DNA of 64,000 bases from Oopsacas minuta. Its lineage: Eukaryota > Animalia > Porifera. Made by a program: the position numbers and the translations under genes. The notes below the pieces were generated by a model. The model saw only the letters and a list, made by a program, of their open reading frames with translations. It did not search any database and was not told the DNA's origin. Positions 32,713-64,000 of this stretch are shown here, one piece after another; positions within the stretch are counted from its first letter, which is position 1, and each line of letters opens with the position of its first letter. Location: contig JAKMXF010000299.1 of the NCBI GenBank assembly GCA_024704765.1, positions 558,001 through 622,000 on the forward strand. The letters are read 5' to 3'.

Positions 32713-33126
32713 TACTCAAAAGTTTACTAATTTATATTCTTCACAATTGTTGAGTGATTTCCTATTATTTTACTATCCATATTATGAGAAATTTTCAGCA
32801 GGTGTTTTCTTTCTTCGAAATCTCACTTTTTGAATATTTTGCTTTCTCATCACCATCACCATGATGACGTCATATTTTTGGTGGCCGATGTGTTACACCT
32901 AACTTCATCAATTGTAACTTTGTAAGTACGAGCCAAAGGCTCGTCGCGAAGCGACGAACTAGGCACATTGCGTCTCGAAGTATCCATAATTCTCCAAATT
33001 GATGGCCCTATATTTAGGACAATGGAATTCACAAAACCCCCTTTGTAGCCGTTGAGGGCCAATATCTACTTAGATTTTCAGGTTTGGCTAATTTGTTTAC
33101 TTTATATTCATAAAAACAACAATAAA

Positions 33127-33369
33127 TTATTATACATTTTGGGGCCAATTGCGTGTAATCCAGATAATCTTTGAGGTTCCAGTGAATCCCGATTACCCGC
33201 ACTTGACTGTATATATCTAAGTCAATCATTTTACTGAGCCATTATAGTATAGCCGACACCTCTATGTAATGGAGCTGATATGCTTTATTGTATAGAAGCG
33301 ATCATTATGCGATGTCTAGTTGTAGAATGAACAAAGAAGCGAAAGAACTAAGTATTTTGCATGAGTAAA
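33127..33369 (+). repeat. Left arm of ~245-bp inverted repeat flanking the aspartic protease gene
   Basis: Reverse complement of 36126-36370, with only scattered mismatches. Confidence 0.9.
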
Positions 33370-33644: not shown

Positions 33645-35636
33645 ATGTATTCTCGTGTGTGCTTATTCTGTATCATTATAACGTTATCTCTTGGATACGG
33701 GGCCTCAAAAGCAGGAGTGGAAGAGAGTATCAAAAAATTTTCTGTTAGTTTAGATGTAATAAATCCCCGAGATAGAAACTGTAAATTGCTGTCTAATCAT
33801 AGTAAATGTGATGTTGACCTATCTGGGGTTGTAGACAGTGCTAGGGTGTCAAGCCTAGATGATGGACTGTGGCTGATAATGACTATAAAAATCGGTGCAG
33901 CTAAACAACCATTCAAAGTGAGTTATATATTTATCGTAGTAAATGCAGTATGTCAATAGCTTGCTCTTTCCAGATATAGCTAATATGATTCAAAATATCT
34001 ATAATATGCCATCTTAGGTGGAGCTAGACACAGGATCAAACCTCCTGTGGGTATTTGGAGATAATTGCTTGGATGATAAAAACGAAGAGTGTAAGGGACA
34101 TACTAAGTTCGTTCTTGAAAAAGCTACGAAATACAAGGATTTCGAACTTGAATATGAAAGTGGGTATGTAAAAGGTAAAGAAGTCAAAGGTGTTGATGTG
34201 CATGTAACAGGCAAAATCACAATAAAGAATCAACTGTTTGGTGCTGCTGGGGATGTTGATGAAGAATATGAAGGTCTTGATGGAGTAATGGGTTAGTTAT
34301 CGATTTTAAATCATCTGCTTCTTTCAAATGTATTTTCACCTAACAATTTAAATTTTGACATTTCAATTTGTTATCTTTACAAGTATAAACACAACAATAG
34401 AAACAGGGATTTTGGGTACTTTCTTGCACTAATTTAACCCTTGAAAGTTATCCTTACAAACTTAAATTGGAAATTTACCAAAGGTGTCAAAAATATGATT
34501 AATCGAGGGTGAAAGTGTAAATGAATAATGATTAGGCACAAATGCACGGCATGACCAATTAAATGGATCCCTCATATTAAAATACATTCAAAATGTACTC
34601 GATGAATTCATTGAATATTTACGTAGTTGGAAAAGTTACGAGACATCTGTTATTCCAATACAATCTTCAGGTTTGGATATGGATATTACAGATGGATACC
34701 CTTCTGTAATATATAACATGATAGCACAGAAACTAATTACGGAGCCAGCCTACTCACTGTATCTAAAAGGGGCAACGACTGCTGTAGATGGAGGAGAGAT
34801 AACCTTTGGAGGTCGCAATGAGGATCTTGTGGTGGAAGATAGCGGAGTTATGGTTAAAATGATAAAAAGTGATTTCATCTTGGCAAAAATGACAAGTCTT
34901 AAGGTAGGAGAAGTGTTTTACTGTAGCAAAGATATAGACAAATGTAGAATAATAGTAGATTCAGGATGTACCTATATCTATGGAACTAAAGCATTTGTAG
35001 ATGATTTACACAAAGAAATAGGTAAGCAAATTTTGTAATGTCTTTATAAAAACAAGTACGCTTCGCTTGCTTGGACTATCGAATTTTGATATACAGTAGA
35101 CACCGCTTAGAATCGGCTCACTTGACCAGAAACAGAACCATCCAAATAGTATTAATATACTACTGTTAATCGGGCCAACACCTTTATTCCCCTTAATCTG
35201 GTCAAAATGGCGTGGTCCCACATGCAATGTGACGCAATTACGCGGAGTCTATACTTGTAAGATATGTAATTTTGATATTTGTGCGTTTAAATTCGATTCT
35301 GCTTTAGTATTAATCATTTAGAATTGGTTAAACCTAACCCTGATGTATGTTTTATTTGTTTGTCTTCTAACTATAGGGGCTGATGAAGAGGATATTGTTG
35401 ATTGCAAGAAGATAGATTCTTTCCCAACTCTTGAAATAATGTTTGGTCAATCAAAGATCACTTTAGAATCCAAATATTATATCGATGTAGACGAGGATAC
35501 GTGCACCAGTCTGTTTGAGATAAATGAAGACGATGACTATGAATGGTCATTAGGAGTTCCATTCTTTGTCAAGTATTACATAGAATTCGACTTTACAGAT
35601 AAGGATGAACATATTTGTTTCTGGAAAAAGAAATAA
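33645..35636 (+). CDS. Secreted pepsin-family (A1; cathepsin D/E-like) aspartic protease, 4 exons, ~385 aa
   Basis: Exons 33645-33917, 34018-34291, 34671-35021 and 35377-35636 are phase-consistent GT-AG. Signal peptide; catalytic motifs ELDTGSNLLWV and IIVDSGCT; GGEITFGG; WSLG..F..YY.EFD. Confidence 0.9.
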
Positions 35637-36125: not shown

Positions 36126-36370
36126 TTTTACTCATGCAAAATACTTAGTTCTTTCGCTTCTTTGTTCATTCTACAACTAGACATCGCATAATGATTGCTT
36201 CTATACAATAAAGCATATCAGCTCCATTACATAGAGGTGTCGGCTATACTATAGTGGCTCAGTAAAATGGTTGACTTAGTATATATACAGTCAAGTGCGG
36301 GTAATCCAGATTCACTGGGACCTCAAAGATTATCTGGATTACACGCAATTGGCCCCAACATGTATAATAA
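36126..36370 (-). repeat. Right arm of ~245-bp inverted repeat flanking the aspartic protease gene
   Basis: Reverse complement of 33127-33369. Confidence 0.9.
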
Positions 36371-36737
36371 TGTTATAGAATGATTACTAAGAATTAAAGG
36401 GATGCAATTTATGTGCTAAATATTATTTGTCCCGATTAACCGGTGGCTCTGATATGCAGAGTCTATTGTAACACATAGTTTAATCAATTATACAGTGGAT
36501 CTCACTAAATATATCATAGCTCTCGTGCACGAGAGTTTATGACATTATCCGGGAAAAGCAATTTATCTGCTTAATGTCATACTTCTAGGCGAATGTGACA
36601 AATATTCGAGATTTAATAATATTGTTACCCGGAATATGACACAAACCTTTGTGTGACTCCTTCTGGTCCTATACGGTTATTTTGTACAGTGTAAAGAAAT
36701 TCCTCTGTTCCGACACTAGAGACAAATATACTCCAGC

Positions 36738-37232: not shown

Positions 37233-39923
37233 ATCTAGCATTAATGTAAAATCTCTATGCTTTGTTTAATACTTCTTTAATGAAGAATTACGTATAAAAC
37301 GTATTGAATAATAACATATTATACGTTCAGTCTACAATTTTTGGTGACGTAATTTCTATTAGGCTAATTTCTGCAATTAATATTTTGCATCAAAACAGTA
37401 GTTCTCGAATGGTTTAAGGAGAAATCTCAGATAGTTGACCAAACTATATAATACTTAATAATAACATATTTTAAACAAATCTAACACAATGTTATATCTC
37501 CTATTTCGAAGTTAACCTAGACTTGACGTATAACGCGATAATTATACGCGTATTATATAACTTAAATGAAAGAACGAAATCGTTGATATTTTGTACAAGT
37601 TCGAATTATTGAATGGAATATATATTATAATACCATTCAGGGGAAATTCGAGTTTTGTTCGAATTTGTGAAAGTTCGAATTAACGGTGATCGACTATATT
37701 AATATCTGACAACACAGCCTATATCTACAAATTATTCCAGGCCGAAATGACATCATCTGATTGCATACTTATCAGTCATAGTCAACATACGATAACTCGA
37801 ACCTCAGGGGAAATTAAACAAACAAGAGGTAGCTAAGCATCCGGGCAACACTCAAGAGCGCCGGGCTTGCTCAAATTCAAAGTGAATCTCTTTACTACAA
37901 TCCAAAGAGTGGACTATAATGCTGCACGAAATTAAAGGGGTTGGAGAAACATAGCGACCCTCTTGTTATCAAAATCCAGTCCATATGAATTATACAAGAT
38001 AGGGGCTAAAGTAATTCTTAGGCCACGCAAGTAATATGGGACCAAGACATACATCTAATACATTGAATCAAATCAATTCATCTTCATGTATGCATAATCT
38101 AACGCATAATCCCACAATACCTTTTTGTTCAGTTCCACCACATATAGAACAATAGCCACAATAACTGTGACAGGATTGTGGTTGTGTGGTTTAATGGTGT
38201 TAGTGGGCTGTAAAGATACGACTTGTCACTTATTCTTCAAACTCTTCATAATCGGGTAAGCTAGGTGCAGTGGAATAGCGTTCGAACTCCGAAGGAATAG
38301 TCAATCCGTGTTTCGTAATTAGATTAGATGTTCTCTTGCTACGCAGTAGAAACCCTTCATTTGTTTGGAAATAATTCTCCCACTTTCGATGGTATGCCTC
38401 TAGTCCATTTGTTAAATTTGTCTCATATATCAGGGTTTTGAGAACTCTAAGTGCATAGAAAACTTTTGTATATCATTGAAACTATAATTGTATTTAATCA
38501 CTGCAAGTGGACCTTTGGGTTCCATCACGATGCATATGTATTGTTGGAATGTGAATTGATTCGTGTCATGATTGGATATTTACTCTTCCTTTACATTTAA
38601 AACCCAAAGTCTTTGGAAACTTCGTTGATGACACGCCATTGTCTTGTGTAATTATGAAATTGGATGGGTTGGTACACTCTCCATCTTATGCATGTATTTT
38701 TGGAATCGACACCATGTTTGGACATCCTTAGGGCATTGCTATATGTATTTCATCAGTATTATCATCGTTGGTAACTATCTACATGGGGAGGCACGTTATC
38801 ACATGAATGTTTCCAATATTGTGTTTGATTACTAGCGTAGTGCTCCTATTAATAAATACATTTAGCATGTTGTGGGTACATTTTGTAATTTTAATATATT
38901 ACTTATACTGAGGCTTAAACGCTCCGTAATCAAGGGGAACATTTGCACCAAAATCATTTTACTTTGGCATAAATGGTCCACATACGATTTTAAGCGAAGT
39001 CATCAATATTTTAGTACCTTCGACAGCTCATCAATTCTGATGATTATTCTTTATACCAAAATCGTCCAAAATGTTGGTAGCCAAATATTAGATTATCCGC
39101 TTGTATCTGTTGATAATTATACTTATTCTTATCAAAACAAGCCAAAACCGTGCAGATTTCTTCTGTGACCATAGATGGTAATTTGTATACTTTGGTATAA
39201 TTAAAAACAAATAGAAAGCGGTAAATCGCATATACAAATTTTGAGGATCAAATAAAGTCAAAAATTTGATGAATTCCTTGAAGGTAATCAATATTAACAA
39301 CATCTACAGTAGTCAACTAGTTATGTAGTCTCTCGTATCTATGTAAACTTAAATCAGATACCATAGTAAATATCAGTAAGAATGAAGAATATTGCCAAAA
39401 CGACACAAGGGTAATTGTCTCATATTAGAAACGAGTTGCTTCGCTTGCTCGCGTTGCGCGGCTTGCGAACACTTTGTGTTCGCATGAGACTCCGCACTTC
39501 GTGCCTCAAATTTTACCAAAGTATAAAATTGCAATATTGAATTAATAAATATATACTTCAACAATTTGTTTACTTTATATTCATAAAAACAACAATAAGT
39601 TTCCATATGACAAACTTGAAAATGGGAAATTCGGAATCAGCATACCCGATTACCTCAATGTAATTGTGTACTTTACCTATATCGTCAACAGAAAGATGTG
39701 TTATTCCCTATACTATATCTGAAAATCAACTTCCCCTATCACTATAATACAAAGTGAACAAACAAACAAACACACCCACCCAATAATTGAGATATAATAC
39801 TATAGATTTAAACATCAAATGTTCATTTCTTCAAAGGTAAACATTGATATTCGATGTAAAACAAAATAAAAAATAAAAAATAAAAATTGTGTTCAAAACA
39901 ACAATTAGATAATATATAAATAT

Positions 39924-42796
39924 CTACGTCAGTTTCTGAATGTATTTGAGAGTTGGATCCCAATTATCAGATTTCCCTCTTGAATTGTATTCCTTTTCAT
40001 AATCTAGTGCTGCTCTACCATTTTCAGACAAGAAATTTTCAACAGCCCTTCCTGTAAAATACTGCTCCAATTCTCTCTTCTCATCCATTGTTATATACCT
40101 TGGTTGAATGTCTACTCTTTCTTTGGTCCAAGAAAATGCCCATAAGATTGTGGTTGTGTGTTTCAAAACTTCTCTTACAGGTGCAATTTGAAAATTCACA
40201 CGATTTCCAGCAAAAGCAAAATTTATTTTTCCATTTTTGTGTTCCAAATGGACTCGGAAATACTCAGCATCTCCAGAAGAACGGTCCAAGTTGAAATAGT
40301 TGGTGGGAGCAAGATTACTATGATCTTGAAACTTTGCGAGTTTTAGCAACGCTATCACATCAGGGGTGAGTTTGTATATTATTCGCAGCTGCTCAACATA
40401 ACTATCCCATTCATTTACCTCCACGCCGTATCCAACTGCAGAATATCTGTTCTCTTGGATCCGAGTCAGCTCAAGGTTGGGTCGCTTTGTAATTGGTCCT
40501 AAAATAATCAATACTAATAAAACGCAATAAATCTGTAAGTATATATCTATAATAATAAATCTCAATTGTTGTTTGTTTGTCCGTAGTCAAGGAAAGGATT
40601 TACGCTATGCAATTTTGAAATTGTCGCATAATTATGTATTTATTCTGTTTATCAAGGAAGTAAATAGAATTCAATAAAACTTCACTAAATATATCGAACA
40701 TGTGAATCCGATTTTCACACTTTTGGATTAATCATATATAAATGTATTGTTGTTTTTATGAATATAAAGTAAACAAATTTCAAAAACCGAGGTAGAATCA
40801 TACTTTTCGTGACTATGCTGGTATACTTGAGTATGCTGAGTCTGAATATTGTAAATAACATCAATATTATTAAATCTCAATTGTTGTTTGCCTGTTGTTT
40901 GTCCGTTGAATACCTCGAGCCGCAATGCGACGAACCAAAGGCTCATATATATATGTTTGTATGTCCAGGATTGATTGAAGAAACTGGAAGACCCCAGGCT
41001 GATTTTGTATACAAAGGTATTTTGGGCCTGGCTCGGACAAGCTCGAGCCTTGGGCAAAAATTCATTCCGATGACAAAATTATGACGTCCTTGTCACCTTA
41101 TTGGATTTTCGAAAAATCACATTATTAACCACTGCTCAGCCAATAATATGAATTCCGGGTATTATAAGACGTACAAATATAATCGAGCCCTGCCCTGATG
41201 TACGTAATACGAAAGTCTACTGCATGTACTCATGTGTGATAAAATGATAACAGGCTGTGGTACATTAATAAATTTCTGGGTTACCCTGTTCCCATGTCAA
41301 TAATTATGCAACAGTGTAGCATATTTTATAGACAGATCTTAGCAACGGATGAAGTATATGCGTACTTAAAGCTAAATTAAATTTTAAAAAGGATTTGACT
41401 CAAACATTAAATCAAATCAAATCAAATCAAATCAAATCAAATCAAATCAAATCAAATTCCATTTAAAATGCATCAAATCCATCCAAATTAAATCCAACTC
41501 AAAACAAATCCACAACTCTGACACAAAGTGCCGAGATTACTAACCAAAAGCGACATAGCATCTTAGGTATCACCACAGAAGGCCATTGAATTGAATTTGG
41601 ATGGACCATGGATAATAAAATCTTAAAATTTTAACTATTCTGTGAATTCAAGGCGCATAGTGCCGAGTATATTCTGTCGCGTAACGACCAATAAAACTAT
41701 ATAGTTTAGTTGTTTAGTAATTTAGCTAACCAGGAGACTTAAGCTGTAGTGCAGCGACCTAGCAAGCGAAGTGGGCCAGTATACATATTTATAGACAATG
41801 TGTGATAAAGCCTGGGAGACCAGGCTCTCACAAATCAGTGTTTAATCCAATTTCTTAGGGCCAAAATATATATACGAGCCCACCGCTTGTATATCCCTTG
41901 CGCACACTTTGTGTTTGCATGGGACTCATTCGTGCTTCAAATTTAGCAGAGTAAAAAATTGGAATATTGAATTAATAAATTAATATTTCAACTATTTGTT
42001 TACATTATATACATAAACAACAATAAATTACAAAAGAGGAACTTGAAAATGCGAACTTCGGGATTCAGCGTACTTGATTCTCCATATATTTCAGTGGGGC
42101 CGGCCGACTGAGCTGTAGCAACTCATTTTGAGATGGAAAAATCAACTAGTTGTATTGAATCAGTTGGTTGTAGTTAAATGAATCAATTAGTCATTGACTG
42201 AATGGGTTCGAATGAGTTAATAACACAAATCAGGCCTGGAGCATGGCTTTTAAATGGCAAGTAGGTAGTTATTTACCACAAGAATGGGAAGCATCCAGGG
42301 AAATGATGTACCAGTTTATTTTGCTTTAGCAGTACTTGCAAAAACTCAGTGAAAATGTGTTAAATCTCATTATGTCCAGTTTGAATCTTGAATTTACATT
42401 GGGTTGATAACAGGAATGCTCCACGGACCTCTGTATGCCTAGAACTATACATATTCGACCCAGGAGCATAGTCACTCGACTTTATAATACCTCATTAATT
42501 AGCCAAATTCATAAGCTTCGGCAATCGAGAAGGCTCAATTGAATTAGATAGAATATATGCTAATATACAGTAACACTTATACCTTCATAATGAGCTAAGT
42601 CTGTACTTTCAGAAGAATCCGATTGTCCAACAAACCTCCTCACTAGATTTGTCTTTTCATAAGGTGTGGGTGTGGATAACCAAAAATAAAAAGATAATCC
42701 ATAATACAGCAAGATCAAAAGTAAAACACACTCAAATATGAATTTTATCAGCTGTATCAGAGCTAATATGTATTTCCGTAAATGAGAGAATAGCAT
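39924..42796 (-). CDS. Uncharacterised two-exon type II membrane protein (262 aa), intact copy L
   Basis: Exon 1 (42796-42583) encodes a short N-terminus, the TM segment FIFECVLLLILLYYGLSFYFWL and a stalk, and ends at GAAG|GTATAA (phase 1). Exon 2 (40498-39924) starts after TTATTTTAG|GA (phase 1) and encodes a ~190-aa globular domain. The same exon pair and phases recur in the inverted copy. Confidence 0.75.
41409..41453. repeat. (AAATC)9 microsatellite
   Basis: Nine perfect tandem units, seen directly. Confidence 0.95.
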
Positions 42797-42894
42797 TGTT
42801 TCTTCTAAAGAGATATATGCTAATTATAAAATAATAACTATAGGTCAGTCATCTTCATCTATGTTCCATAACCCAAAAAAGATTCATTAAACAA

Positions 42895-43353
42895 TACGAG
42901 CCTTTGGCTCGTCGCTCCGCGATGAATTCGGTGCATTGCGCCTCGAGGTATACATTATTCTCCAAAGTGACAGCCCCTTTAAGTATTATAATATATATAT
43001 ATTTAGAACAATGTAATTCACAAATATACGTGTGACATATATATTATTGACTAATTTTGTGAGATCAACCCCCTTTGAAGCGGTGAGAGCAAATAGCTAC
43101 ATAAATTTGAAGATTTTGCTAATTTGTTTCCTTTATAGTCATAAAAACAACAATAAATTTACATATGATTAATCCAAAAGTGTGAAATCGGATTCAACAT
43201 GTTCGATATATTTTGTAAAGTTTATTGAATTCAATTTACTTCCTTGATAAACACGATAATTAGATAGTTATGAGACAATTTCAAAATTGCATACCGTAAA
43301 TCATTTCCTTGACAACGAACAAACAAACAACAATGTGATTTAATAATATAGAT
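42895..43353 (+). mobile_element. Non-autonomous Helitron/Helentron-like element (family A). Partial or rearranged copies at ~32927-33126, 40550-40945 (-), 43580-43790 (-), 45955-46475, 51320 (-), 52580-52790 (-), 54790-55265, 57025-57205
   Basis: 5' hairpin acgagcc-ttt-ggctcgt; conserved core tttgtttactttat..ataaaaacaacaataaatttacatatgattaatccaaaa...taccgtaaatc.tttccttgac; 3' (CAAA/CAGA)n microsatellite then ttgagattt..ataatatagat. This architecture resembles Lep1/HINE-type elements; the class assignment is an inference. Confidence 0.55.
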
Positions 43354-44221
43354 TTTTGACCCAGTACCCCTGAGGGTCCGCAAACAACATATTGCCGCCA
43401 ATTGTTTAAATATTTGTATAGAATCTATAGAGTGGAACTCGGTTAAATCTGCTAACTTTATATTGCCGCAAAGTGAACAAAGATTTATTAAATGTTGTCT
43501 ACAATGCCATAATTAGGCTCAGCATATTCGATTACCGCAGTATAGTTGCTGAAAGTATGAATCTACTACGAATTTGAAATTTGCTCACTTTATGTCTCCT
43601 AAAAGTAAACAAATATTCACAATATGTTGTTTATCATATACGGAATCAACATACTCGATTACCACAGTACAATGTTGTTTTGTTGTTGTTATGTTATCTA
43701 ATATTTGGTTCTGGACTTTATGAACTGAACATATTATATGTTTTCTATTTGGAACCGTGACAGATACACACAAATTGAGATTTAACAATATAGATGCGTC
43801 TTAAAGATTATGGCAGTATCATGCTGCTATGGTTAAGATTATGAGGTTATGTACTCGAGGGGCCGTAGGCCCGAGTGCGGACACAGAGTGTTTGCAACCC
43901 AGAGATTGTGTTTCTTGTATCATAATTATCCTTAAAGATTAATCTAGAATAAAGTTGACAGATAATTAATTGACTTAAATATGTGAATAGAATACTATAT
44001 ATATATATATACATACATATATACACTGTTATGGTTAATATTTTGATGCTGTGGCGTAGTGAAGTTGTGATTTTGACCCGCTTCCCTCCTCTGTAACGTT
44101 TTTTCGCAGTTTTGTAATACAAAAAAGGGGCTGCCACGTTTGAACGACCCCCTTTGTAAGTCAAAAATTTGACCGCATTCCTTAACCTTTTTGCAATACT
44201 AGTAATAGTGCTTTAACAATG

Positions 44222-44392
44222 CTATCCCTGCTATCCCTGCTATCCCTGCTATCCCTGCTATCCCTGCTATCCCTGTTATCCCTGCTATCCCTGTTATCCC
44301 TGCTATCCCTGCTATCCCTGTTATCCCTGCTATCCCTGCTATCCCTGCTATCCCTGCTATCCCTGCTATCCCTGCTATCCCTGCTATCCCTG
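44222..44392. repeat. 9-bp minisatellite (CTATCCCTG)19, G-quadruplex-compatible on the minus strand
   Basis: 19 units, three of them the TTATCCCTG variant. The minus strand reads GGG-N6 repeated. Confidence 0.95.
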
Positions 44393-44627
44393 GCCATCTA
44401 GGTAAGTTTACATAATCTTACGAAGACTATATATTTAGTAGACTATCATATTGTTTATTAATTTCTATATTCCTACGAACACTAGGTCGTGGTTCCTCAC
44501 CTTTTTTACACCCGCTGACACCTGTCATTATCCATAATGACTCTTTTTTGGTGTCACGGAGCATAGATGAAGATGACTGACCTATACTTTTTATTTATAA
44601 TTAGCATATATCTCTTTTGAAGAAACA

Positions 44628-44832
44628 ATGCTACTTTCTGATTTACAGAAATACATATTGGCTCTGATAAAATTCCTTTTTGCGTGTGTTTTACTTTTGA
44701 TCTTGCTGTATTATGGATTATCTTATTTATTTTGTTTATCCACAACCACAGCTTACGAAAAGATAAATCTATTGAGGAGGTTAATTGGACAATCAGATTT
44801 TTCTGAAAGTACAGACTTAGCTCATCGTGAAG
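44628..44832 (+). pseudogene. Orphan exon 1 (TM anchor) of the type II membrane protein family, copy M
   Basis: 68-codon paralog of 42796-42583 with an intact ATG and a GAAG|GTATGT donor. Homology covers 44562-45130 (upstream 65 bp, exon and start of intron), then stops. No exon 2 copy occurs before 51722. Confidence 0.7.
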
Positions 44833-46650
44833 GTATGTGTGTATAAGCCAAATTTCCTATCTAATTCAATTGAGCCTTTTCGATTTCCGAAGGCTTATGA
44901 ATTAGCTAATTAATGGGGTGTGATGAGTTTTAATACAGTTTCACTGAGTTTTTGCAAGTACTGCTGAAGCAAAATATACTGGTACATCATTTCTCTAGAT
45001 TCTTCTCATTCTTATTTCAAATATCTACCTACTTGCCATTAAAAAGCCATGCGTCCGGCCTTGATTTGTGTTGTTAACTCATTCAACTCATTCAATAACC
45101 TTAGGTAATTTTGCCAACTCAAAACGAGTTGATACAGCCCGGGGGAGCCAGGGAGGTCTGACCCCAGTAGGCCTCCAAAAATTATTGAATAGATTGACTC
45201 TACCAAGGGATAGTGGAAAACTGGATAGATTTCAGAGACTTTGCCCTCCTAAAATTCCACCAGGCCCCCTCAAAAATCCTGTTGCTGCTAAGCCCATGGG
45301 CCTCACCCTCAAATTCCTGTCGCATAACAGGCCCCGCGGCATTGCCACAGGTAAACATTTTTGGCAATACCTTATGCTCATACTATTACAATACAGCATT
45401 ACATTGTACAGTGTACTATAATATGTTTATCGTTAAAATCGTCAAAATGAATCGAGTGATTGAATTAACTAAAACAAAATAGTAAGAACTATTATGGACA
45501 AATATATTTTAGTATTTCATTAAGAAGTAAGTGATTATATACAATCTCGTATTTACCTCATTTGCTTTTGCCAATAAACTTTGAAGCTATTTTTGCTATC
45601 ATGCAGAGTAACCTTTAATAGCTGCACCAGACACATCGCTTCATTCAAATCAATGTCTTGAGCCTGTAATAGTTTTGTTCAAGATATAAGTATACCCTGG
45701 GATGCTATTTAAAGATTCATTAATGAATTTGAATTCTAAGTTCCATCACGATATGAGCGTTCTAGCCCTTGCGATACGTTGTCTAATACCATCAGCAGTT
45801 AGGTTGATCAATGTTTCCCATAGCTTAGTCAATATAAGGCCTAACAGTAATAGTACCAGGGATGCAGTATTAGCTAAGAGCATCTATATACATGGTTCTT
45901 TAGTGTAGAAAAGGTGCATTTTTGCCTAAATAAATGTATTGCATATTTGTAGAACACGAGCCTTTGGCTCGTTGCTTCGCATTGCGCCTCGAGGTATTCG
46001 ACGGCCAAACAAACAGACAAACAACAACTGAGATTCAATAATATTGATGTTGTTTACGATATTCAGACTCAGCATAGTCGTTGAAACTATGATACTACCT
46101 CGGTTTTGAAATTTGTTTACTTTATGTACCTAAAAGTAAACAAATATTCACAATATGTTGTTTACAATATCATATTCAGACTCATCATACTCGATTACCC
46201 CAGGATAGTCGTTGAAAGTATGATTCTACCTCAACTTCGAAATTTGTTTACTTTATATTTATGAAAACAACAATAAATTTACATATGATTAATCCAAAAT
46301 TGTCAAAATCGGATTCAGCATGTTCGATATATTTAGTGAAGTTTTATTGAATTCTATTTACTTCCTTGATAAACACAATAAATACATAGTTATGAGACAA
46401 TTTCAAAATTGGATACCGTAAATCCTTTCCTTGACAACGGACAAACAAACAATAATTGAGATTTAATATTATACATTTTACATTTTACACCAATAAATGC
46501 TAAAACTTTTCAGGATGCGTCAAAATATTTGTCTCGTAAGCATCTATTTAGCAAAATATGTCATTCTTCGATGCCTCGTAGAACCTTCAATATTGCATTT
46601 ATCAACTCAAAGTGAATAAATGAAATGATCTATAGATGGTTTTATACAAA

Positions 46651-47082
46651 ATGTCAAAGATTTGTCATTCAAAAGTTGGCTCGTTGTTGATTTACGGTAG
46701 AAACCATGGATGACGAAGTTTTATGAATATTCAATTATAACTCGAGAATCATTAAAATTATGGTAAAATCAGACTAGTCAATTTATACTATTTACCCTGT
46801 GTAATACATTTTGATACGATATATCGCACCAATGTGACGATGCCCATATACGCTCATTTTCAAGATTCCGCAATACTCTTCAATTATTTCATACCAAATG
46901 TATCACAAGGGTAAGGGAATTCGGTAGGGGAAAATCGGTTTATTAGTATAAATTGGCTATTCTGATTTTAACATAATTTTACGATTCTTCAGTTATAATT
47001 GAATATTCATAAAAATTCTTCATCCATGGCCTCTACCGTAACTCAACAACGAGCCAACCTTTGAATGACTAATTCTTGACAT
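46651..47082. mobile_element. MITE with ~95-bp TIRs
   Basis: atgtcaaagatttgtcattcaaaagttggctcgttgttga...gaatattcaattataact (46651-46742) is inverted at 46984-47082. Confidence 0.75.
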
Positions 47083-47799
47083 AAATATAAAACACAAACT
47101 GTTTATGAATGTATGTCCTCACATCTCCGAGATTACTGAACCGATTTTGACAGAATTTTGCATGCCGCCTGGGAGTCACCCTGGCACCCTGACTAAAAAA
47201 TAATTAAGAAATGGATTATTTTATCAAACCATATGTTATTCTTCAACATCTCTACCCTGCAATTCACAGTGGGTATTCGCTTCCAGTAGGGGAAATTTCA
47301 TATTTAAATCTTGTCAATATATATATATTGAGAACGATTAGAGATATGTAGGTGTATCTAAATCTTCAATTGCATTTTATCTGAATCCACTTTCATGAGT
47401 GTTGTAGTATCTCAAAGTCTCACCAACTGGATTTATTTCTAATCTTTCTTTTACAACTCAAAACAAATTTCGGCGAAATTTAATTAATTTTCTATTATTT
47501 AAACTTTGTGATGATACAGCATAATTATGGGTTATATAAAATGAATAATGCGAACATATTTTGTTGTGAACAAGACTTTCTCGCAATTTCTCGCACTTTT
47601 CAGGATATTATCCGCATGACACAAAACTATTGTATAAATATTTGTTCAGCGAAGTTCAGCGAAATATTAATAATACCAACATTCCATTCTATACTTTTCG
47701 TTACTATGGTATGTCAGGCTAGATGTTACTATGTTGATGTAATGTCTAACTCAACTATTATTCACAAGTCCACTTTCATTCTCGAAGTCAGTTGACCCG

Positions 47800-48400
47800 A
47801 GTTCGTCAATTTGTGGATTCAAGAAATTCATTAGGGTAGTGAAACTTTAAAGGTTATCATTTTGAGATAGCAATGTGATTGGCTGGTTGGAGAATCTAAA
47901 ATTTGAGTATTGATTAGATCAGATAAATTTCCTTGACAATCTTTCAATTCAAGAGGAGAAACTATAAACAAGAGAAAATGTGAACGATCACCAGTTGTTT
48001 GAGATCTAAGATTAGTTCACTGTGACTTCCCGACCCATCTACACCATGTTTAACCATAAAGTTGAGCGGCTACATCAGGGGTTCTTCAATATATTGTATA
48101 GAGTGCGATGATACGTCTCAAGAGATTTACAAGGTGGTCAATGTAGTTAAATGTTACTCCAATTGGATTTGATACTGATTGGTAATATTGGAATGGAGGA
48201 ATTAGAGTTGTACGAAAATCACGAATTTTAGGCCAACTGGCTAACTTTTGACTGAAGTTTCAGTCTTGTAATATAGTCCTGACGTTTAAGAACTATTTGT
48301 TCAAGATTATTTCGGATAGATCGTGGTGCATCGTTTATCTAAGCCGAGTACACCTCAAATGGTGGTTCTTCACATCTTTTGAGAACGTTGGTAATTGTGA
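47800..48400 (-). mobile_element. Decayed Transib/RAG1-like DDE transposase fragment
   Basis: Frameshifted minus-strand peptides in the expected order: LKRQDYITRLKL / LASWPKIRDFRTTLIPP..NPIGVTFNYIDHLVNLLRRII / FMVKHGVDGSGSHSE / FLLFIVSPLELKD..SPTSQSHC. Compare, from memory, the Transib motifs KWGCDGSSGHSEY and SLVPL...PSSTRYCRP. Confidence 0.6.
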
Positions 48401-50266
48401 GTCTATTCAAGTTTTTCTCCAATTATTCTACTTGCCAAATTGACATCTACTATAGCATTTCGATGGCCCTGTTTAGTATCCAGAAATATTTAATTTATTT
48501 CATTTTACAGCTTTATATGACTATAAATTATGTGTAATAATTTGATATATACTGATTTAGGGTTTAATATATATTTATTTTTGTAGTTGACATAATATAT
48601 CACATTCCTATACAACATACCCGAATCATAATATTATGCTTCAAACAAGATTTGGATACAATTCTTCAATAACTAATCCGTTGCTTAGTTACAGTATTCG
48701 TTATCGAAACAAGATACTATTATGAATATCCTATATAGTCCTGAATTATAAGAAACAAAATAAAATTGAATATTTTTGGAAATTAAATATGACGTCATAA
48801 TTTTTAAATACTAACTCATTCTCAAAATCTGACATTCCAAAAAATTGCCTTTAGTTAAAACCTCAGGCGAAAATGATGAGAATTGTTGAAGTTATAGCCT
48901 ACTGGAAATTTTTACCCAAAATAACCCACTGTGCAAATTGATGTATTTTATTCCATTTTATAATTGACCAATCAAGTTATACTTATTATTACCAAAATAT
49001 GACAACATACTTGCTATGGAATGTGATTGAAAGTGTAATACTACAGTTGATTCATAATTTATTGTAATTAATACACAATAACTAAATTTGAACTGATCCA
49101 TTGGAATCCTTAACTCGCTCTCCTAGAAACACCTGATATAAACACAACGGGGGAAATGTTTGGAGGAAGAAGCTTCACCCATTATTGGGGTGGAATAGTC
49201 CAGTTCCCGAATTTGAGATAATCCATACATGGTACATTGATTGTAGTTTGCAGTACTATAGATTAAGTCCTATGGTTGGGTATGAAGGACAATTGTGTAT
49301 TCGAGTCGATCAAAATATTATCACATATCAGGCCCGACGGCAAGGATTTTGAAGTGTTCCGGTTAAACTTAGTACCATTACAAAGTGGTCCAGTTGAATC
49401 TCACTTCTCATAGAAACAGTATTAGCAGCCCCATCAAGTGGCCGGTTAAAAAGCGCCAGCCCTGCATATGTTATATAATTAAGGCGCAGGGAAATTTCCG
49501 CAACTGAAGGCATAAGACGGCACGTGCCCGAGCCATACAGGCCGGAGTCTAAAATATTGTGCCGCACCCTAAAAAGATACTAACTACCCCTCTGCCCAGT
49601 CGTCCTGGCCCCACTAACTATTTATACTCTTATAACCGGAATAAAGTAATCAGAAAAGTATTAGAACAGTTTTCCATAGCATAGAGGTTATACCCTACAT
49701 GTTCTTATAACAGGCATCCACATACTAGTTGCAACTTTTGTAAAAATCAATTCTTCAGATTTCTATAAGATCAGTTGAATTTAGCTAGTTTTTGGAATGA
49801 AATGATGGAATATAGTTTATCTACCCAGCATAATGGCGTAATAATAATTTCGTTATGAATCATTGTAATTAATAATAACTTCCTCGGAAAAAATTTTGAA
49901 GGTAAAATTAGAAAACGACCGAGAGGTTTTAGTCCCAGTCCCGGTCTTGGTGAATATTGATGTTTCCCTGGGAATCCTAACCGGGAATGGACAACTAAAA
50001 GTTGTTAATTGAATTATTGAAGATTTGTAAAAATTCTAAAAATAGACTTTCATTTAAGTATTGTAGGTACTCCGCACAGTATTTATGAAATGGAAGGTGA
50101 TATTAATATCAAATTTTTCTTTCAAGTAGAAGTAAATCCTATATAACTAACACCTATTTTACACTCGCTGACCCCTGCCATTTTTTTGGGGTCAAGGAAA
50201 CTAGGTGAAGATGACTGACCTATAGTTATTATTTTATAATTTGCATATATCTTTTTAGAAGAAACA

Positions 50267-52271
50267 TTTCTATTTTCTCATTTACAGAAATACAACTTAC
50301 CTCTGATACAGCTGATAAAATTCATGTTTGAGTGTGTTATACTTTTAATCTTGCTGTATTATGGATTATCTTTTTATTTTTGGTTATTCACACCCAAACC
50401 AACACCTACACCCAAACCAACACCTACACCAATACCCACACCTAAAGAAAAGACAAATCTAGTGAGTAGGTTTGTTAGAATATCGGATTCTTCTGAAAGT
50501 ACAGACTTATCTCATTATAAAGGTATGAGTGTATATTAGCCATTTATCCTATCTAATTCAATTGAGCCTTCTCGAAGGCTTATGAATTTAGCTAATTAAT
50601 GAAGTATAATGAGTTTTAACACATTTTTACTGAGTTTTTGCAAGTATTGCCGTTGCATAATATATATATTTTGGATCCTGGATTGATTGAATACCTCAAT
50701 ATTCGCAAAGAATATTGCGCAGTCATCAATAATACCACATATGGTCATTTTCAAGATTACGTCATAATTGTCAGAAATATAATATCAAAATATATTATTA
50801 GGGTATGGGAAGTCGGGTATATATTATATGTGTGTAAGTTGGTTTGGCTGTAACATTGAAGGATGTCAAGTTATGGATGAATATTGGCCCAAATATACCA
50901 CCCAATGGTCACTACTATAACTCTGAAACTCGCTAACTTTATCATGAAAATTTTTGATATTTTGTGTCGCAGCAATCGTTAGATCCCATGGTATCATTTT
51001 TGAAACAATAAATTTACTAATTAACTCATTATAGCATTTTTTGACATAATTTCCAACTAAGCAAGCAGATGAAGTCATTTCGGTCAGGAAATACTTTGTA
51101 TATATAGAATTTGTTTATTGTCAAATATCAATAATACATTTATTCGGGTCACAATGTACCATTTTAATTTATGTATTCAATCAATCAAGGGTCCAAATTT
51201 TTCTGTGACCACCATTGCCTTGGTGTATACCTAGAGGCTTGCTCTCATAGATATATAGGGGTAATCAACTACACTGGATCCCATTTTCGCATTATCAAGA
51301 TACTCATACGTTGTAAATTTATTGTTGTTTTTACGGATATAAAGTAAATAAATAGTTGAAATCTTAAAATATTCGCACATAGAGACTTGCTCTTAACGGT
51401 TATAGATGGGTATCATGAGAAAGTGGATTAAACACTGATTTATGAGAGCCTGGTGTCCCAGGCTCTATCACACATTGCCTATTAATATGTATATTAGTTA
51501 TCTGTATAGAATATAAGTCATTAGACTAGTATAGTCTGCCACCGGATATTGTATTAGCCCTCTTTTACTTAACTCACTACGATCTTGCATTCCCCTCTGC
51601 CACTGTAAGGCGCTTCAATTTTGAATTTGAGCCGGATGCGGCAGGCCATGTTGTCATTATACTTATTCAAATATGCGTATTCGTTGTTATTATTTCACAG
51701 GGAATATTCGTTTTATTTTAGGATCAAAGCGACCCAACCTTGAGCTGACTCAGATCCATGAGAACAGATATTCTGCAGTTGGATACGGCGGGAGGTAAAT
51801 GAATGGGATAGTTATCTTGAGCAGCTGCGAATAATATACAAACTAACCCCAGATGTGATAGCGTTGCTAAAACTCGCAAGGTTTCGAGATCATATTAATC
51901 CTGCTGCTACCAACTCTTTCAACTTGGATGAATCTTCCGGAGATACTGAGTATTTCCGAGTTTATTTGGAACACAAAAATGGAAAAATAAATTTTGCTTT
52001 CGCTGGAAATCGTGTGAATTTTCAAATTGCACCTGTAAGAGAAGTTTTGAAACACACAACCACAATCTTGTGGGTATTTTCTTGGACCAACGAAAGAGTA
52101 GACATTCAACCAAAGTATATAACAATGGATGAGAAGGAAGAATTGGAGCAGTATTTTACAGGAAGGGCTGTTGAATATTTCGTGTCTGAAAATGGTAAAG
52201 CAGCACTAGATTATGAAAAAGAATACAATTCAAGAGGGAAATCTGATAATTGGTATCCAACTCTCAAATAA
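50267..52271 (+). pseudogene. Pseudogene copy R of the type II membrane protein
   Basis: Exon 1 (50267-50522) has ATG changed to TTT and an expanded TPKPTPTP stalk. Exon 2 (51722-52271) has a 1-nt deletion (GGC GTG GAG to GGC GGG AG), giving TAA at 51796-51798, and TAC changed to TAA six codons before the normal stop. Confidence 0.8.
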
Positions 52272-54216
52272 ATTCAGGAACTGACGTAGATATTTTATAT
52301 ATTATCGAATTGTATATTTGTTTGACATCGAATGTCAATTCGATGTCAATCTTTGAAGAAATGAACAATTGATGTATAAATCTATGGTACAAATATTTAA
52401 ACTCAATTATTGGGTAGGTGGGCGTTTTTGTTTGTTCACTTTGTATTATAATGATAGTGGAAGATGATTTGCGTATATAATATAGGGAATAACATATCCT
52501 TCTATTGAGGATATAGGAAAAGTACACAATTACATTGGGGGGTAATCGAGTATGCTGATTCTAATTTTCATACTTTCTAATCATATATGTAAATATATTT
52601 GCTGTTTTTATGAATAGTAAGTAAACAAATAGTTGAAATCTCGAAATATGCTTAGAGACTTGCTATTTAGGCTAGAGATGGATAAAGGACGATGAATCCG
52701 AGTTTCGCATATGCAAGTTTCTCTTATGTAAATTCTTTACTGTTTTTACGAATATAAAGTAAACAAATTGTTGAAGTATATATATTTATTAATTCAATTT
52801 TGCAATTTTATACTTTGGTAAATTCGAGGCACGAAGTGCGGAGTCTCATGCGAACACAAAGTGTTCGCAAGCCGCACAACGCGAGCAAGCGAAGCAACTC
52901 GTTTCTAATATGAGACAATTACCATTGTGTCGTTTGGACAATATTCTTCATTCTTACTGATATTTACTATGGTATCCGATTTAAGTTTGCATAGATACGA
53001 GAGACTATATAACTAGTTGACTACTGTAGATGTTGTTGAATGTTGATTGCCATCAAGGTGTTCATCAAATTTTAGATTTAATTTGATCCTCAAAATTTGT
53101 ATATGCGATTCGCCGCTTTCTATTTGCTTTTTATTATACCAATGTATACAAATTTATCATCTATAGTCACCAAAGAAATCTGCACGATTTTAGTTTGTTC
53201 TAACAAAAATAAGAAGTATAAATATTAAATATATTAGAAAGGGAACGATTCATTTTAATAAAATGATCAACAGATACAAGCGGATAATCTAACATTTGGC
53301 TGCCAACACTTTGGACGATTTGGGTATAAAGAATAATCATCAGAATTGATGAGGTGTCTAAGGTAATCAAATATTGATTACTTCGCTTAAAATCGTATGT
53401 GGACCATTTATCCCAAAGTAAAATGATTTTGGTACAAATGTTCCCCTTGATTACGGAGCGTTTAAGCCTCAGTATAAGTAATATATTAAAATTACAAAAT
53501 GTGCCCACAACATGGTAAATGTATTTATTAATGGGGCACTAGGCTAGTAATCAAACACAATCTTGGAAACATCCATGTGATAACGTGCCTCCTCATGTAG
53601 TTAGTTACCAACGATGATAATACTGATGAAATGCATATAGCAATGCCCTAAGGATGGCCAACATGGTGTCGATTCCAAAATACATGCATAAGATGGAGAA
53701 TATACCAACCCACCATCCAAATTCATAATTACACAAGCCAATGCCGTGTCATCAACGAAGTTTCCAAAGACTTTGGGTTTTAAATGTAAAGGAAGAGTAA
53801 ATATCTAATCATGACATGAAGTAATTCACATTCCAACAATACATATGCATCGTGATGGAATCCGAAGGTCCACTTGCAGTGATTAAATACAATTATAGTT
53901 TCAATGATATACAAAAGTTTTCTATGCACTTAGAGTTCTCAAAACCCCTAATATATGAGACAAATTTAACAAATGGACTAGAGGCATACCATCGAAAGTG
54001 GTGAATTATTTCCAAACAAATGAAAGGTTTCTACTGCGTAGCAAGAGAACATCTAATCTAATTACGAAACACGGATTGACTATTCCTTCGGAGTTCGGAT
54101 GCTATTCCACTGCACCTAGCTTACCCGATTATGAATAGTCTGAAGAATAAGTAACAAGTCGTATCTTTACAACCCGCTAACACCATAAAACCACACAACC
54201 ACAATCCTGTCACAGT

Positions 54217-54363
54217 TATTGTGGCTATTGTTCTATATGTGGTGGAAGTGAACAAAAGGGTATTGTGGGATTATGGGTTAGATTATGCATACATGAAGAT
54301 GAAATTGATTTGATTCAGTGTATTAGATGTATGTCTTGGTCCCATATTACTTGCGTGGCCTAA
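54217..54363 (+). pseudogene. Cys/His-rich PHD-like coding relic (mirror copy ~38020-38165, minus), possibly a transposase C-terminus
   Basis: YCGYCSICGG...DLIQCIRCMSWSHITCVA*. A TNLTNGLEAYHRKW peptide near 53960-54002 resembles the MULE TNN.LE.H motif. Many stops surround both. Confidence 0.35.
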
Positions 54364-54967
54364 GAATTACTTTAGCACCTATCTTGTATAATTTCTATGG
54401 ACTGGATTTTTATAACAAGAGGGTCGCTATATTTCTCCAACCCTTTAATTTCGTGCATTACAGTTCACTCTTTAGCTTGTAGTGAAGAGATTCACTTTGA
54501 ATTTGAGCAAGCCCGGCGCTCTTGAGTGTTGCCCGGATGCTTAGCTACTTCTTTTGTTTGTTTAATTTCCCTGAGGTTCGAGTTATCGTATGTTGACGGT
54601 AACTGATAAGTATGCAATCAGATGACATCATTCGGCCTAGAATAATTTGTAGATATAGACTGTGTTGTCAAATATCAATATAGTCGACCACCGTTAATTC
54701 GAACTTTCCGCACTTTGCCAACATTTGTACTAGACTATATCTGCATTTATCTCCAATGAATTACAGATACTACTTAATTATATATTAATTTACTTTCGTT
54801 ACATTTATATTCCTAAAAACAACAATAAATTTACATATGATTAATCCAAAAGTGTGAAAATCGGATTCAGCATGTTCGATATATTTAGTGAAGTTTTATT
54901 GAATTCAATTTACTTCCTTGATAAACACAATAAATACATAGTTATGAGACAATTTCAAAATTGGATA

Positions 54968-55203
54968 CCGTAAACTGGGGCTACTTTGGCCCACTGGGTT
55001 TGCTTTAGCCCAAATATCAAAGTTTCAAAGAAACTAGATTAGATTCAGTATTATACTTGAAAATGACTTGCCAAAATTTTAACGAATTTTCAAATATCGG
55101 TAGACAATTTCGAAAACAAATACAATATTTATTCGACACGTACGCAAATTTCAATATTTGGGCTAAAGGAAAGCCAGTGGGTCAAAATAGCCCCAGTTTA
55201 CGG
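54968..55203. mobile_element. pogo/Tc1-type MITE (236 bp) nested in a family A element
   Basis: TA|CCGTAAACTGGGGCTACTTTGGCCCACTGG ... CCAGTGGGTCAAAATAGCCCCAGTTTACGG|TA. Removing it restores ggata-cc(g/t)taaatcctttcc, as in the uninterrupted copies. Confidence 0.85.

Positions 55204-56302: not shown

Positions 56303-64000
<7,698 letters not shown>

What the first reader, a model, noticed from the sequence alone, without database searches (positions are those of the whole stretch)
37670..54707. 17-kb palindrome carrying a head-to-head, birth-and-death family of an unrecognised surface-protein gene
Arms of ~5.2 and ~4.5 kb face outward around a 7.3-kb repeat-rich spacer. The left arm has an intact gene, the right arm a copy with three lesions, and the spacer a third exon-1 module. 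All three modules begin at nearly the same point, ~60-65 bp upstream of the start codon (gaagatgactgacctata). The ORF track shows only disconnected pieces; the two-exon gene appears only when the phases are matched. Palindromic arrangement allows arm-to-arm gene conversion and hairpin dsRNA if read through (inference).
Basis: partly seen in the sequence, partly recalled or inferred. Interest (0 to 1): 0.75.

Follow-up and report, generated by a model that had tools for sequence, protein, structure and literature searches.

The report
Inverted gene duplicate decaying in sponge
A glass-sponge gene for a small membrane-anchored protein of an undescribed family was copied in mirror orientation; one copy still works and the copies are rotting, which is an ordinary way for genes to be born and die.

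Summary
Window 37669-54708 of Oopsacas minuta (glass sponge, not human) is an inverted duplication. The left gene is intact and already in GenBank as the 262-aa hypothetical protein LOD99_7371. The right copy has lost its ATG, has a 1-bp deletion that gives a stop after 24 codons of exon 2, and has a late TAA. A third exon-1 module lies in the spacer.

The "arms" are mosaics. Only exon 2 plus 3' flank (2.8 kb, 93.3% identical) and the exon-1 module (0.4 kb, 85-91%) are homologous. The introns are unrelated and hold different dispersed repeats, and at least 3.1 kb of the spacer is dispersed repeat.

I found no sign of arm-to-arm gene conversion: the longest identical run is 80 bp, against a chance median of 72 bp. 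Most amino-acid changes are derived in the right copy (13 of 17).

"Surface protein" is not supported. Profile searches link the domain to about 25 unnamed eukaryotic proteins with signal peptides, several ending in -DEL, which points to the secretory pathway or ER. There is no Pfam family and no convincing PDB fold.

A second locus of this superfamily (contig C310) also carries an inverted duplicate of a last exon. The scan has noted other inverted duplications elsewhere in this genome.

Verdict: an ordinary birth-and-death inverted duplication involving an undescribed domain family.

The parts
37669..40498 (-). Left homologous block: exon 2 plus 2.25 kb of 3' flank
   Evidence: It is 93.3% identical to 54708-51722. 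Positions 37669-39430 occur only twice in the genome; 39430-39810 is a dispersed repeat of about 380 bp.
39924..40498 (-). Exon 2 of LOD99_7371 (190 codons plus stop): the conserved alpha/beta domain
   Evidence: AG acceptor before 40498 and TAG at 39926-39924. It is 100% identical to P0001. The AF2 model has pLDDT 82.3.
40499..42582 (-). Left intron (2084 nt), not homologous to the right intron
   Evidence: About 50% identity to the right intron. It contains a dispersed repeat at 40545-40933 with at least 40 copies in the genome and an AAATC microsatellite at 41409-41457.
42583..42796 (-). Exon 1 of LOD99_7371: start codon, N-terminal hydrophobic helix, linker
   Evidence: ATG at 42796 and a GT donor after 42583. 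Residues 2-41 are helical in the AF2 model, with block pLDDT of 72-89.
42797..42880 (-). About 84 bp of upstream block shared by all three exon-1 modules
   Evidence: Three-way alignment A1. The exact 18-mer lies at 42839-42856.
42890..50180 (.). Spacer of 7.3 kb, largely dispersed repeats
   Evidence: Positions 45818-48938 match at least three dispersed repeat families with many genomic copies. No ORF has a Pfam hit. There is a 9-bp tandem repeat at 44220-44392.
44535..45094 (+). Middle exon-1 module: upstream block, open exon 1 (44628-44832) with intact donor, and about 260 bp of intron; no exon 2 of its own
   Evidence: It is 86-88% identical to 42199-42889. It has a 9-bp in-frame deletion. 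Its branch length is 0.096 and its dN/dS against the left copy is 1.0.
50182..50607 (+). Right exon-1 module: ATG changed to TTT, a new in-frame ATG at 50324, a 42-bp in-frame insertion (18-bp unit, 50390-50444), and a donor after 50522
   Evidence: Its branch length is 0.071.
50523..51721 (+). Right intron (1199 nt), with its own foldback-type dispersed repeat at 50706-51172
51722..52289 (+). Right exon 2, a pseudogene: 1-bp deletion near 51791 with a stop two codons later, and a TAA at 52269-52271
   Evidence: Thirteen of 17 polarisable replacements are derived here.
51722..54708 (+). Right homologous block: exon 2 plus 3' flank
   Evidence: The edge at 54708 is sharp.

Best explanation
This is a locus-specific inverted segmental duplication of one Oopsacas minuta gene, LOD99_7371, followed by decay of the copies.

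Shown:
- The left copy is intact and conservative.
- The right copy is a pseudogene that stops after 24 codons of exon 2 and has collected most of the amino-acid replacements.
- A third, solitary exon-1 module is also drifting.
- The spacer and both introns were later filled independently by dispersed repeats.
- The arms have diverged by about 7% with no trace of homogenisation.

Inferred:
- One inverted duplication plus one further partial duplication of the exon-1 segment produced the three modules, and they inherited a shared breakpoint about 84 bp upstream of the ATG.
- The palindrome has no function of its own.
- The encoded protein enters the secretory pathway through its N-terminal hydrophobic helix and places a roughly 160-190 aa alpha/beta domain in the lumen or outside the cell. 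This domain belongs to an undescribed eukaryotic family whose other members look like soluble ER or secretory proteins.
For: Inverted repeat and its limits.

Not a transposon: the 3' flank has 2 copies and the exon-1 module has 3 copies in the 61-Mb genome, all at this locus.

Left gene: it equals GenBank LOD99_7371. The genome paper PMC10280926 predicted genes with BRAKER/Augustus using RNA-seq hints.

Right copy:
- Lesions are documented.
- No second Oopsacas protein from this locus is in the database.
- Exon-2 dN/dS between left and right is 0.70.
- Thirteen of 17 polarisable replacements are derived in the right copy, including at sites invariant in 8-10 homologues.

Exon-1 modules: star-tree branches are left 0.025, right 0.071, middle 0.096, and dN/dS is 1.0-2.2.

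No conversion tracts were found.

The introns and spacer carry different dispersed repeats. The paper reports 34% interspersed repeats.

Protein family:
- No Pfam match.
- 26 profile hits at E up to 1e-3, from Oopsacas (LOD99_7553 and LOD99_7555), Nematostella and two foraminiferan transcriptomes.
- Signal peptides and -DEL tails among relatives.
Against: - I had no reads, so the assembly of the palindrome is not verified, and no RNA data were inspected directly.
- The two introns are unalignable even outside the repeats I could detect. That is more change than the 7% divergence of the flanks predicts, so the right copy could be a chimera of separately duplicated pieces.
- All three exon-1 modules keep an open frame, in-frame indels and intact donors. 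This could hint at past or present use, although I estimate roughly a 10% probability of this by chance.
- The three modules share a breakpoint, which needs either serial copying or a recurrent break site. I could not tell which.
Confidence: 0.8

Rival explanations
1. Assembly artefact: two haplotypes, or a chimeric join, were placed in inverted orientation by the hybrid SPAdes/SSPACE assembly.
For: The assembly is a PacBio plus Illumina hybrid, scaffolded and polished. Other inverted duplications are noted elsewhere in this assembly.
Against: - The arms differ by 6.7% plus 25 indels, and have unrelated introns and different repeat insertions.
- The authors expect low heterozygosity in this isolated cave population.
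- The outer flanks are different genes: a pepsin-like gene on one side and a myosin gene on the other.
- The window has no N runs.
- A missed-adapter palindrome would be near-identical and would have no 7-kb spacer.
Confidence: 0.05
2. Functional palindrome: the arms are kept for arm-to-arm gene conversion, or to make a hairpin RNA or pseudogene-derived small RNAs that regulate LOD99_7371.
For: The geometry allows it if a transcript entering from the pepsin-like gene at 33645-35636 (+) reads through both arms. About 2.8 kb at 93% identity could pair.
Against: - No conversion tracts were found.
- The arms are only 93% identical, against more than 99.9% in conversion-maintained palindromes (my own knowledge of Y-chromosome palindromes).
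- The two copies are transcribed divergently, so their own transcripts are both sense and not complementary.
- The spacer is 7-11 kb and full of repeats.
Confidence: 0.07
3. The right half is, or recently was, a live gene with two alternative first exons (44628-44832 and 50324-50522) spliced to exon 2 at 51722, and the frameshift is an assembly error.
For: Both exon-1 modules are on the + strand upstream of right exon 2. Each keeps the roughly 84-bp upstream block, an open frame and a GT donor, and the acceptor is in frame. The deletion lies in a G-rich run.
Against: - Right exon 2 carries 13 derived replacements, including at invariant sites, and a premature TAA.
- Exon-1 dN/dS is 1 or more.
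- The assembly has 186x coverage and Pilon polishing.
- No protein is annotated here.
- The intron from the middle exon 1 would be 6.9 kb in a genome whose mean intron is 341 bp.
Confidence: 0.05
4. The arms are the ends of a large transposon or another mobile element that carries the gene.
For: The spacer and flanks are rich in dispersed repeats.
Against: The arm sequence outside the small embedded repeats occurs nowhere else in the genome. No transposase or other Pfam domain is found in the spacer ORFs.
Confidence: 0.02

Closest known systems
Birth-and-death evolution by local (inverted) segmental duplication with pseudogenisation
   Same: There is one conserved functional copy, a neighbouring copy with disabling lesions, an orphan exon fragment, an asymmetric substitution load, and later repeat insertions.
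   Different: The scale is tiny: one live gene, one pseudogene and one exon fragment here, plus two distant paralogues on contig C310. The introns have been replaced far beyond the divergence of the flanks.
Sex-chromosome type palindromes maintained by arm-to-arm gene conversion (human Y P1-P8)
   Same: Kilobase-scale inverted arms around a unique spacer, carrying a gene in each arm.
   Different: The arms here are 93.3% identical with randomly spread differences, and one copy is dead, so there is no homogenisation. The figure of more than 99.9% arm identity in Y palindromes comes from my own knowledge.
Hairpin-RNA and pseudogene-derived endo-siRNA loci (Drosophila hpRNA, mouse oocyte pseudogene siRNAs)
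   Same: An inverted duplicate of a gene lies next to its parent.
   Different: No transcript through both arms is known. The copies are transcribed divergently. This cannot be tested with sequence alone.
Variable first-exon gene clusters (protocadherin, UGT1A)
   Same: Two exon-1 modules, each with its own upstream block and donor, lie upstream of one exon 2 on the + strand.
   Different: The shared exon 2 is frameshifted, and the exon-1 copies evolve neutrally.
Soluble ER-resident proteins with KDEL-type retrieval signals
   Same: Remote relatives have a signal peptide, one domain, and a C-terminal -DEL or -EL (P0017, P0026, P0028, P0032; more loosely P0029, P0035, P0039).
   Different: LOD99_7371 and its close homologues end in -QKLT, -QKLF or -QKLM, with no retrieval signal. 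LOD99_7371 has a long N-terminal hydrophobic helix instead of an obvious cleaved signal peptide.
Cyt/volvatoxin A2 fold, SecB-like fold and GAF-like fold
   Same: An antiparallel sheet packed with helices. These are the top Foldseek hits (Cyt1Aa, E 0.016, probability 0.69) and the top VIA hits (2o2a Z 6.2; SecB Z 5.4; volvatoxin A2 and Cyt2Ba Z 4.5 each).
   Different: All scores lie below the tool's stated noise level (typical best Z of 7-8). TM scores are 0.2-0.3, and the Cyt matches cover only half of the model. This is not evidence of kinship.

Membership tests
Inverted segmental duplication with a pseudogenised copy (birth-and-death) | Two homologous copies in opposite orientation at one locus, beyond chance | tested here: met
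   2.8 kb at 93.3% identity and 0.4 kb at 85-91%.
Inverted segmental duplication with a pseudogenised copy (birth-and-death) | One copy is intact and the other has disabling lesions | tested here: met
   The left copy equals LOD99_7371. The right copy has lost its ATG and has a frameshift followed by a stop, plus a TAA.
Inverted segmental duplication with a pseudogenised copy (birth-and-death) | Relaxed constraint on the dead copy | tested here: met
   Thirteen of 17 polarised replacements are derived in the right copy. dN/dS is 0.70. Exon-1 branches are 0.025 against 0.071 and 0.096.
Inverted segmental duplication with a pseudogenised copy (birth-and-death) | Locus-specific DNA rather than a dispersed mobile element | tested here: met
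   Two and three copies genome-wide, all at this locus.
Conversion-maintained palindrome (Y-chromosome type) | Near-identical arms | tested here: not met
   93.3% identity with 25 indel events.
Conversion-maintained palindrome (Y-chromosome type) | Tracts of identity longer than chance | tested here: not met
   The longest run is 80 bp. Simulation gives a median of 72 and a 95% limit of 106.
Hairpin-RNA / endo-siRNA locus | A transcript through both arms and small RNAs derived from them | not testable with these tools
   No RNA data are available. Divergent gene orientation argues against a hairpin from the genes' own promoters.
Variable first-exon gene | Several first exons with donors lying upstream of one functional common exon | tested here: not met
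   The layout is present, but the common exon 2 is frameshifted.
Any Pfam family | A match at or above the gathering score | tested here: not met
   The best hit is DUF4026_N at 16.7 bits against a cut-off of 27. Ten relatives have no match either.
Undescribed signal-peptide plus alpha/beta domain family (LOD99_7553, LOD99_7555, Nematostella XP_048590654.1 and others) | Significant profile similarity over the whole domain | tested here: met
   hmmsearch E-values run from 1e-13 to 8e-4 over profile positions of roughly 10-165. The paralogue on C310 is found at E 4e-11 to 6e-14.
Cell-surface (plasma-membrane) protein | Evidence for a plasma-membrane location | not testable with these tools
   There is only an N-terminal hydrophobic helix. 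The -DEL tails of relatives suggest the ER.
Hexactinellid spicule proteins (hexaxilin, perisilin, glassin) | MBL fold, CAP domain or His-rich sequence respectively | tested here: not met
   PMC10772126 describes these proteins. There is no MBL or CAP Pfam hit.
Cyt/volvatoxin pore-forming toxin fold | A structural match clearly above noise over the whole domain | tested here: inconclusive
   Foldseek E 0.016 with TM 0.24. VIA Z 4.5 over model residues 1-106 only.

The most novel reading that the evidence does not exclude
The dead right arm is not inert. Read-through from the upstream pepsin-like gene would transcribe the left arm antisense and the right arm sense. That would give a hairpin with a stem of about 2.8 kb whose small RNAs tune LOD99_7371. 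It would be a pseudogene-derived endo-siRNA locus in a sponge, and the second inverted duplicate at the family's other locus on C310 would then be a recurring design rather than an accident. Separately, and more probably (about 0.5), the protein defines an undescribed secretory-pathway domain family with no recognisable fold, shared by sponges, cnidarians and possibly foraminifera.
Probability: 0.07. Interest if true: 0.55.

Novelty: new member of a known kind. Interest (0 to 1): 0.25.

Why it matters
For genome structure it matters little. This is a textbook case of a gene copied in inverted orientation, with the copy decaying. It also shows that a palindromic layout does not by itself imply homogenisation.

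Two by-products have modest value. First, the protein belongs to a domain family absent from Pfam and with no clear PDB fold. The family is found in glass sponges, Nematostella and foraminiferan transcriptomes, and its members look like ER or secretory proteins, so it is a candidate for a new family entry. Second, both Oopsacas loci of this family carry inverted duplicates of a terminal exon plus 3' flank, and other inverted duplications are noted in this assembly. Checking these against long reads would show either a real mutational tendency of this compact genome or a systematic assembly problem.

Tried and rejected
- Pfam on both exons, on the right ORF, on ten relatives and on seven spacer or intron ORFs: nothing at or near the cut-offs.
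- Rfam and tRNA scans of the window: nothing.
- PDB sequence search with two profiles: only spurious designed-repeat hits and one hit at E 0.016.
- ESM Atlas with P0001 and P0032: no usable hit (one search failed because the machine was busy).
- The first AF2 model with 11 sequences was poor, with pLDDT 47. A 33-sequence alignment raised this to 82.
- Foldseek against PDB and the VIA wide search: no match above noise.
- Word search with the 30-sequence alignment added almost nothing.
- JGI metagenome scan for related loci: none.
I therefore could not see the source organisms or gene layout of the ENA homologues, including P0006 and P0007, which share one 421-kb contig.
- Spicule proteins (hexaxilin, perisilin, glassin): considered and rejected from the literature.
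- Transposon origin of the arms: rejected by copy number.
- Gene conversion: rejected by the run-length test.
- Promoter-motif reading of the shared 18-mer: not pursued, because invariant runs of this length are expected in a three-way alignment with about 81% invariant columns, and a longer invariant run lies inside exon 1.


Full report
**Source.** The window is G000:C299:558001-622000 of a 61-Mb, 365-contig assembly. The left-arm gene product is identical to NCBI "hypothetical protein LOD99_7371 [Oopsacas minuta]", so this is the published glass-sponge genome (PMC10280926). It is not human DNA. Composition is 31-39% G+C with low coding density.

**Observation.**
- A self-comparison gives an inverted repeat from 37669 to 54708 with sharp outer edges. 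It is the only long repeat pair in the 64-kb window, apart from one 250-bp pair and small dispersed elements.
- Homology is not continuous.
  - Block B (exon 2 plus 2.25 kb of 3' flank; 37669-40498 against 54708-51722) has 2595 matches, 185 mismatches and 25 indel events, which is 93.3% identity.
  - Block A (the exon-1 module; 42487-42889 against 50607-50182) is 85-91% identical.
  - The introns between the blocks align at about 50%, meaning not at all.
- A third copy of block A lies at 44535-45094 on the + strand.
Three-way similarity begins about 84 bp upstream.

**Gene model.**
- The left copy has ATG at 42796, a GT donor after 42583, an AG acceptor before 40498, phase 1, and TAG at 39926-39924.
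- The published annotation came from BRAKER/Augustus with RNA-seq hints. I did not see the RNA data.

**Right copy.**
- The start codon is TTT, and a new in-frame ATG lies at 50324.
- A 42-bp in-frame insertion of an 18-bp unit adds a Pro/Thr/Lys stretch.
- The donor after 50522 and the acceptor before 51722 are usable and in frame, with two codons fewer than on the left.
- A 1-bp deletion near 51791 gives a stop two codons later, so the reading ends after 24 codons of exon 2.
- A TAC-to-TAA change lies six codons before the normal end.
- No protein from this copy is in the database.

**Selection.**
- Exon-2 dN/dS between left and right is 0.70.
- Using ten homologues to polarise the replacements, 13 are derived in the right copy, 4 in the left and 4 are unresolved. 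The right copy has changed residues that are invariant in all 8-10 homologues with a residue at that position: V106, K127, R205, D252 and K260.
- For the exon-1 modules, a three-taxon decomposition gives branches of 0.025 (left), 0.071 (right) and 0.096 (middle). Within exon 1 itself they are 0.010, 0.089 and 0.111. Pairwise dN/dS is 1.0-2.2.
- So the left gene is conservative and the two other modules drift.

**Gene conversion.** Differences in block B are spread as chance predicts. The longest identical run is 80 bp, and 2000 simulations give a median of 72 and a 95% limit of 106. The arms are not being homogenised.

**Not a mobile element, and later repeat invasion.**
- The 3' flank 37669-39430 has two copies and the exon-1 module has three copies in the whole genome, all at this locus.
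- The embedded stretches 39430-39810, 40545-40933, 50706-51172 and 45818-48938 belong to dispersed families with tens of copies. This fits the 34% interspersed repeats reported for the genome.
- The two introns carry different families, so they were invaded independently after duplication.
- At least 3.1 kb of the 7.3-kb spacer is dispersed repeat, so the original spacer was shorter.

**Protein.**
- Neither exon nor any relative matches a Pfam family.
- Close homologues (54-66% identity, unnamed ENA or Logan records on contigs of up to 1.6 Mb) cover exon 2 only.
- An exhaustive profile search found 26 proteins at E up to 1e-3. Named sources are two more Oopsacas genes on contig C310 (LOD99_7553 and LOD99_7555), Nematostella XP_048590654.1, and EukProt entries of the foraminifera Bolivina argentea and Nonionella stella. 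Those foraminiferan transcriptomes also yield hits to other sponge proteins in PMC10772126, so contamination should be kept in mind.
- Most relatives start with a signal peptide or hydrophobic helix. Four of 23 end in -DEL and three more end in -EL. This suggests the ER or secretory pathway rather than the cell surface.
- With 33 sequences, AF2 gives a confident model of the domain (pLDDT 82.3, pTM 0.71). It has a long beta-hairpin, two helices, a four- to five-stranded antiparallel sheet, and a 36-residue C-terminal helix.
- Foldseek against PDB finds nothing at E 1e-3 or better. Its best hit is Cyt1Aa (E 0.016, TM 0.24).
- The VIA wide search gives Z 6.2 to a protein of unknown function, Z 5.4 and 5.2 to SecB-like chaperones, about Z 5 to GAF domains, and Z 4.5 to volvatoxin A2 and Cyt2Ba. 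All are below the tool's stated noise level of Z 7-8.
- The fold is therefore unassigned.
- The protein is not hexaxilin (MBL fold), perisilin (CAP) or glassin.

**Mechanism.**
- The best reading is an inverted segmental duplication of the gene unit with an inner breakpoint about 84 bp upstream of the ATG, plus one further partial duplication of the exon-1 segment. Loss of function of the copies and repeat accumulation followed.
- The order of events cannot be rooted without outgroup DNA. The shared breakpoint can be explained by serial copying or by a recurrent break site.
- The hairpin-RNA idea needs a transcript that enters from outside, because the two copies are transcribed away from each other.

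**Assembly.**
- Without reads I cannot verify the structure.
- Several points argue against a haplotype or chimeric artefact:
  - 6.7% divergence and 25 indels between the arms;
  - unrelated introns and different repeat insertions;
  - different genes flanking the two arms, pepsin-like on the left and myosin on the right;
  - no Ns in the window;
  - the authors' expectation of low heterozygosity.

Noticed in passing
G000:C310:85298-94049 (L009/L010): The second locus of the same superfamily also has an inverted repeat: 85298-86264 against 94049-93078, 972 bp at 99.3% identity. It carries the last exon of LOD99_7553 plus about 800 bp of 3' flank. The 6.8-kb spacer encloses the rest of LOD99_7553 and all of LOD99_7555.
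   Followed up: partly
G000:C310:91772-92520 (L010): The LOD99_7555 protein (P0018) stops early. Orthologue-like proteins P0019, P0035 and P0029 continue in another frame at 91966-91772, including a -KEL-type end. The annotated C-terminus therefore looks truncated by a frameshift or an unrecognised short intron, and the annotated upstream exon at 94439-94197 looks doubtful.
   Followed up: partly
window 39430-39810, 40545-40933, 43114-43353, 45930-46479, 46482-47082, 47261-48938, 50706-51172, 54799-54974, 57025-57172: There are several families of short non-autonomous dispersed repeats, each with tens of copies in the genome. Two are foldback-type, with hits on both strands at the same place. 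None has a coding match.
   Followed up: partly
window 44220-44392: A 9-bp tandem repeat (TGCTATCCC, 19 copies, 96% matches) that reads as an (SRD)n ORF on the minus strand.
   Followed up: no
window 31102-32712 (+), 33645-35636 (+), 58074-62599 (+): The flanking genes are a single-exon AIF-like Rieske/FAD oxidoreductase, a multi-exon pepsin-like aspartic protease, and a myosin heavy chain. These are my readings of the ORF translations and were not searched.
   Followed up: no
window 33122-33369 and 36127-36376: A 250-bp inverted repeat pair at 96% identity flanks the pepsin-like gene.
   Followed up: no
P0006 and P0007 (ENA, same 421,663-bp contig): Another organism carries two linked members of the close family on one contig, and one of them (P0007) looks N-terminally truncated. 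Local duplication and decay of this gene may therefore recur in relatives.
   Followed up: no
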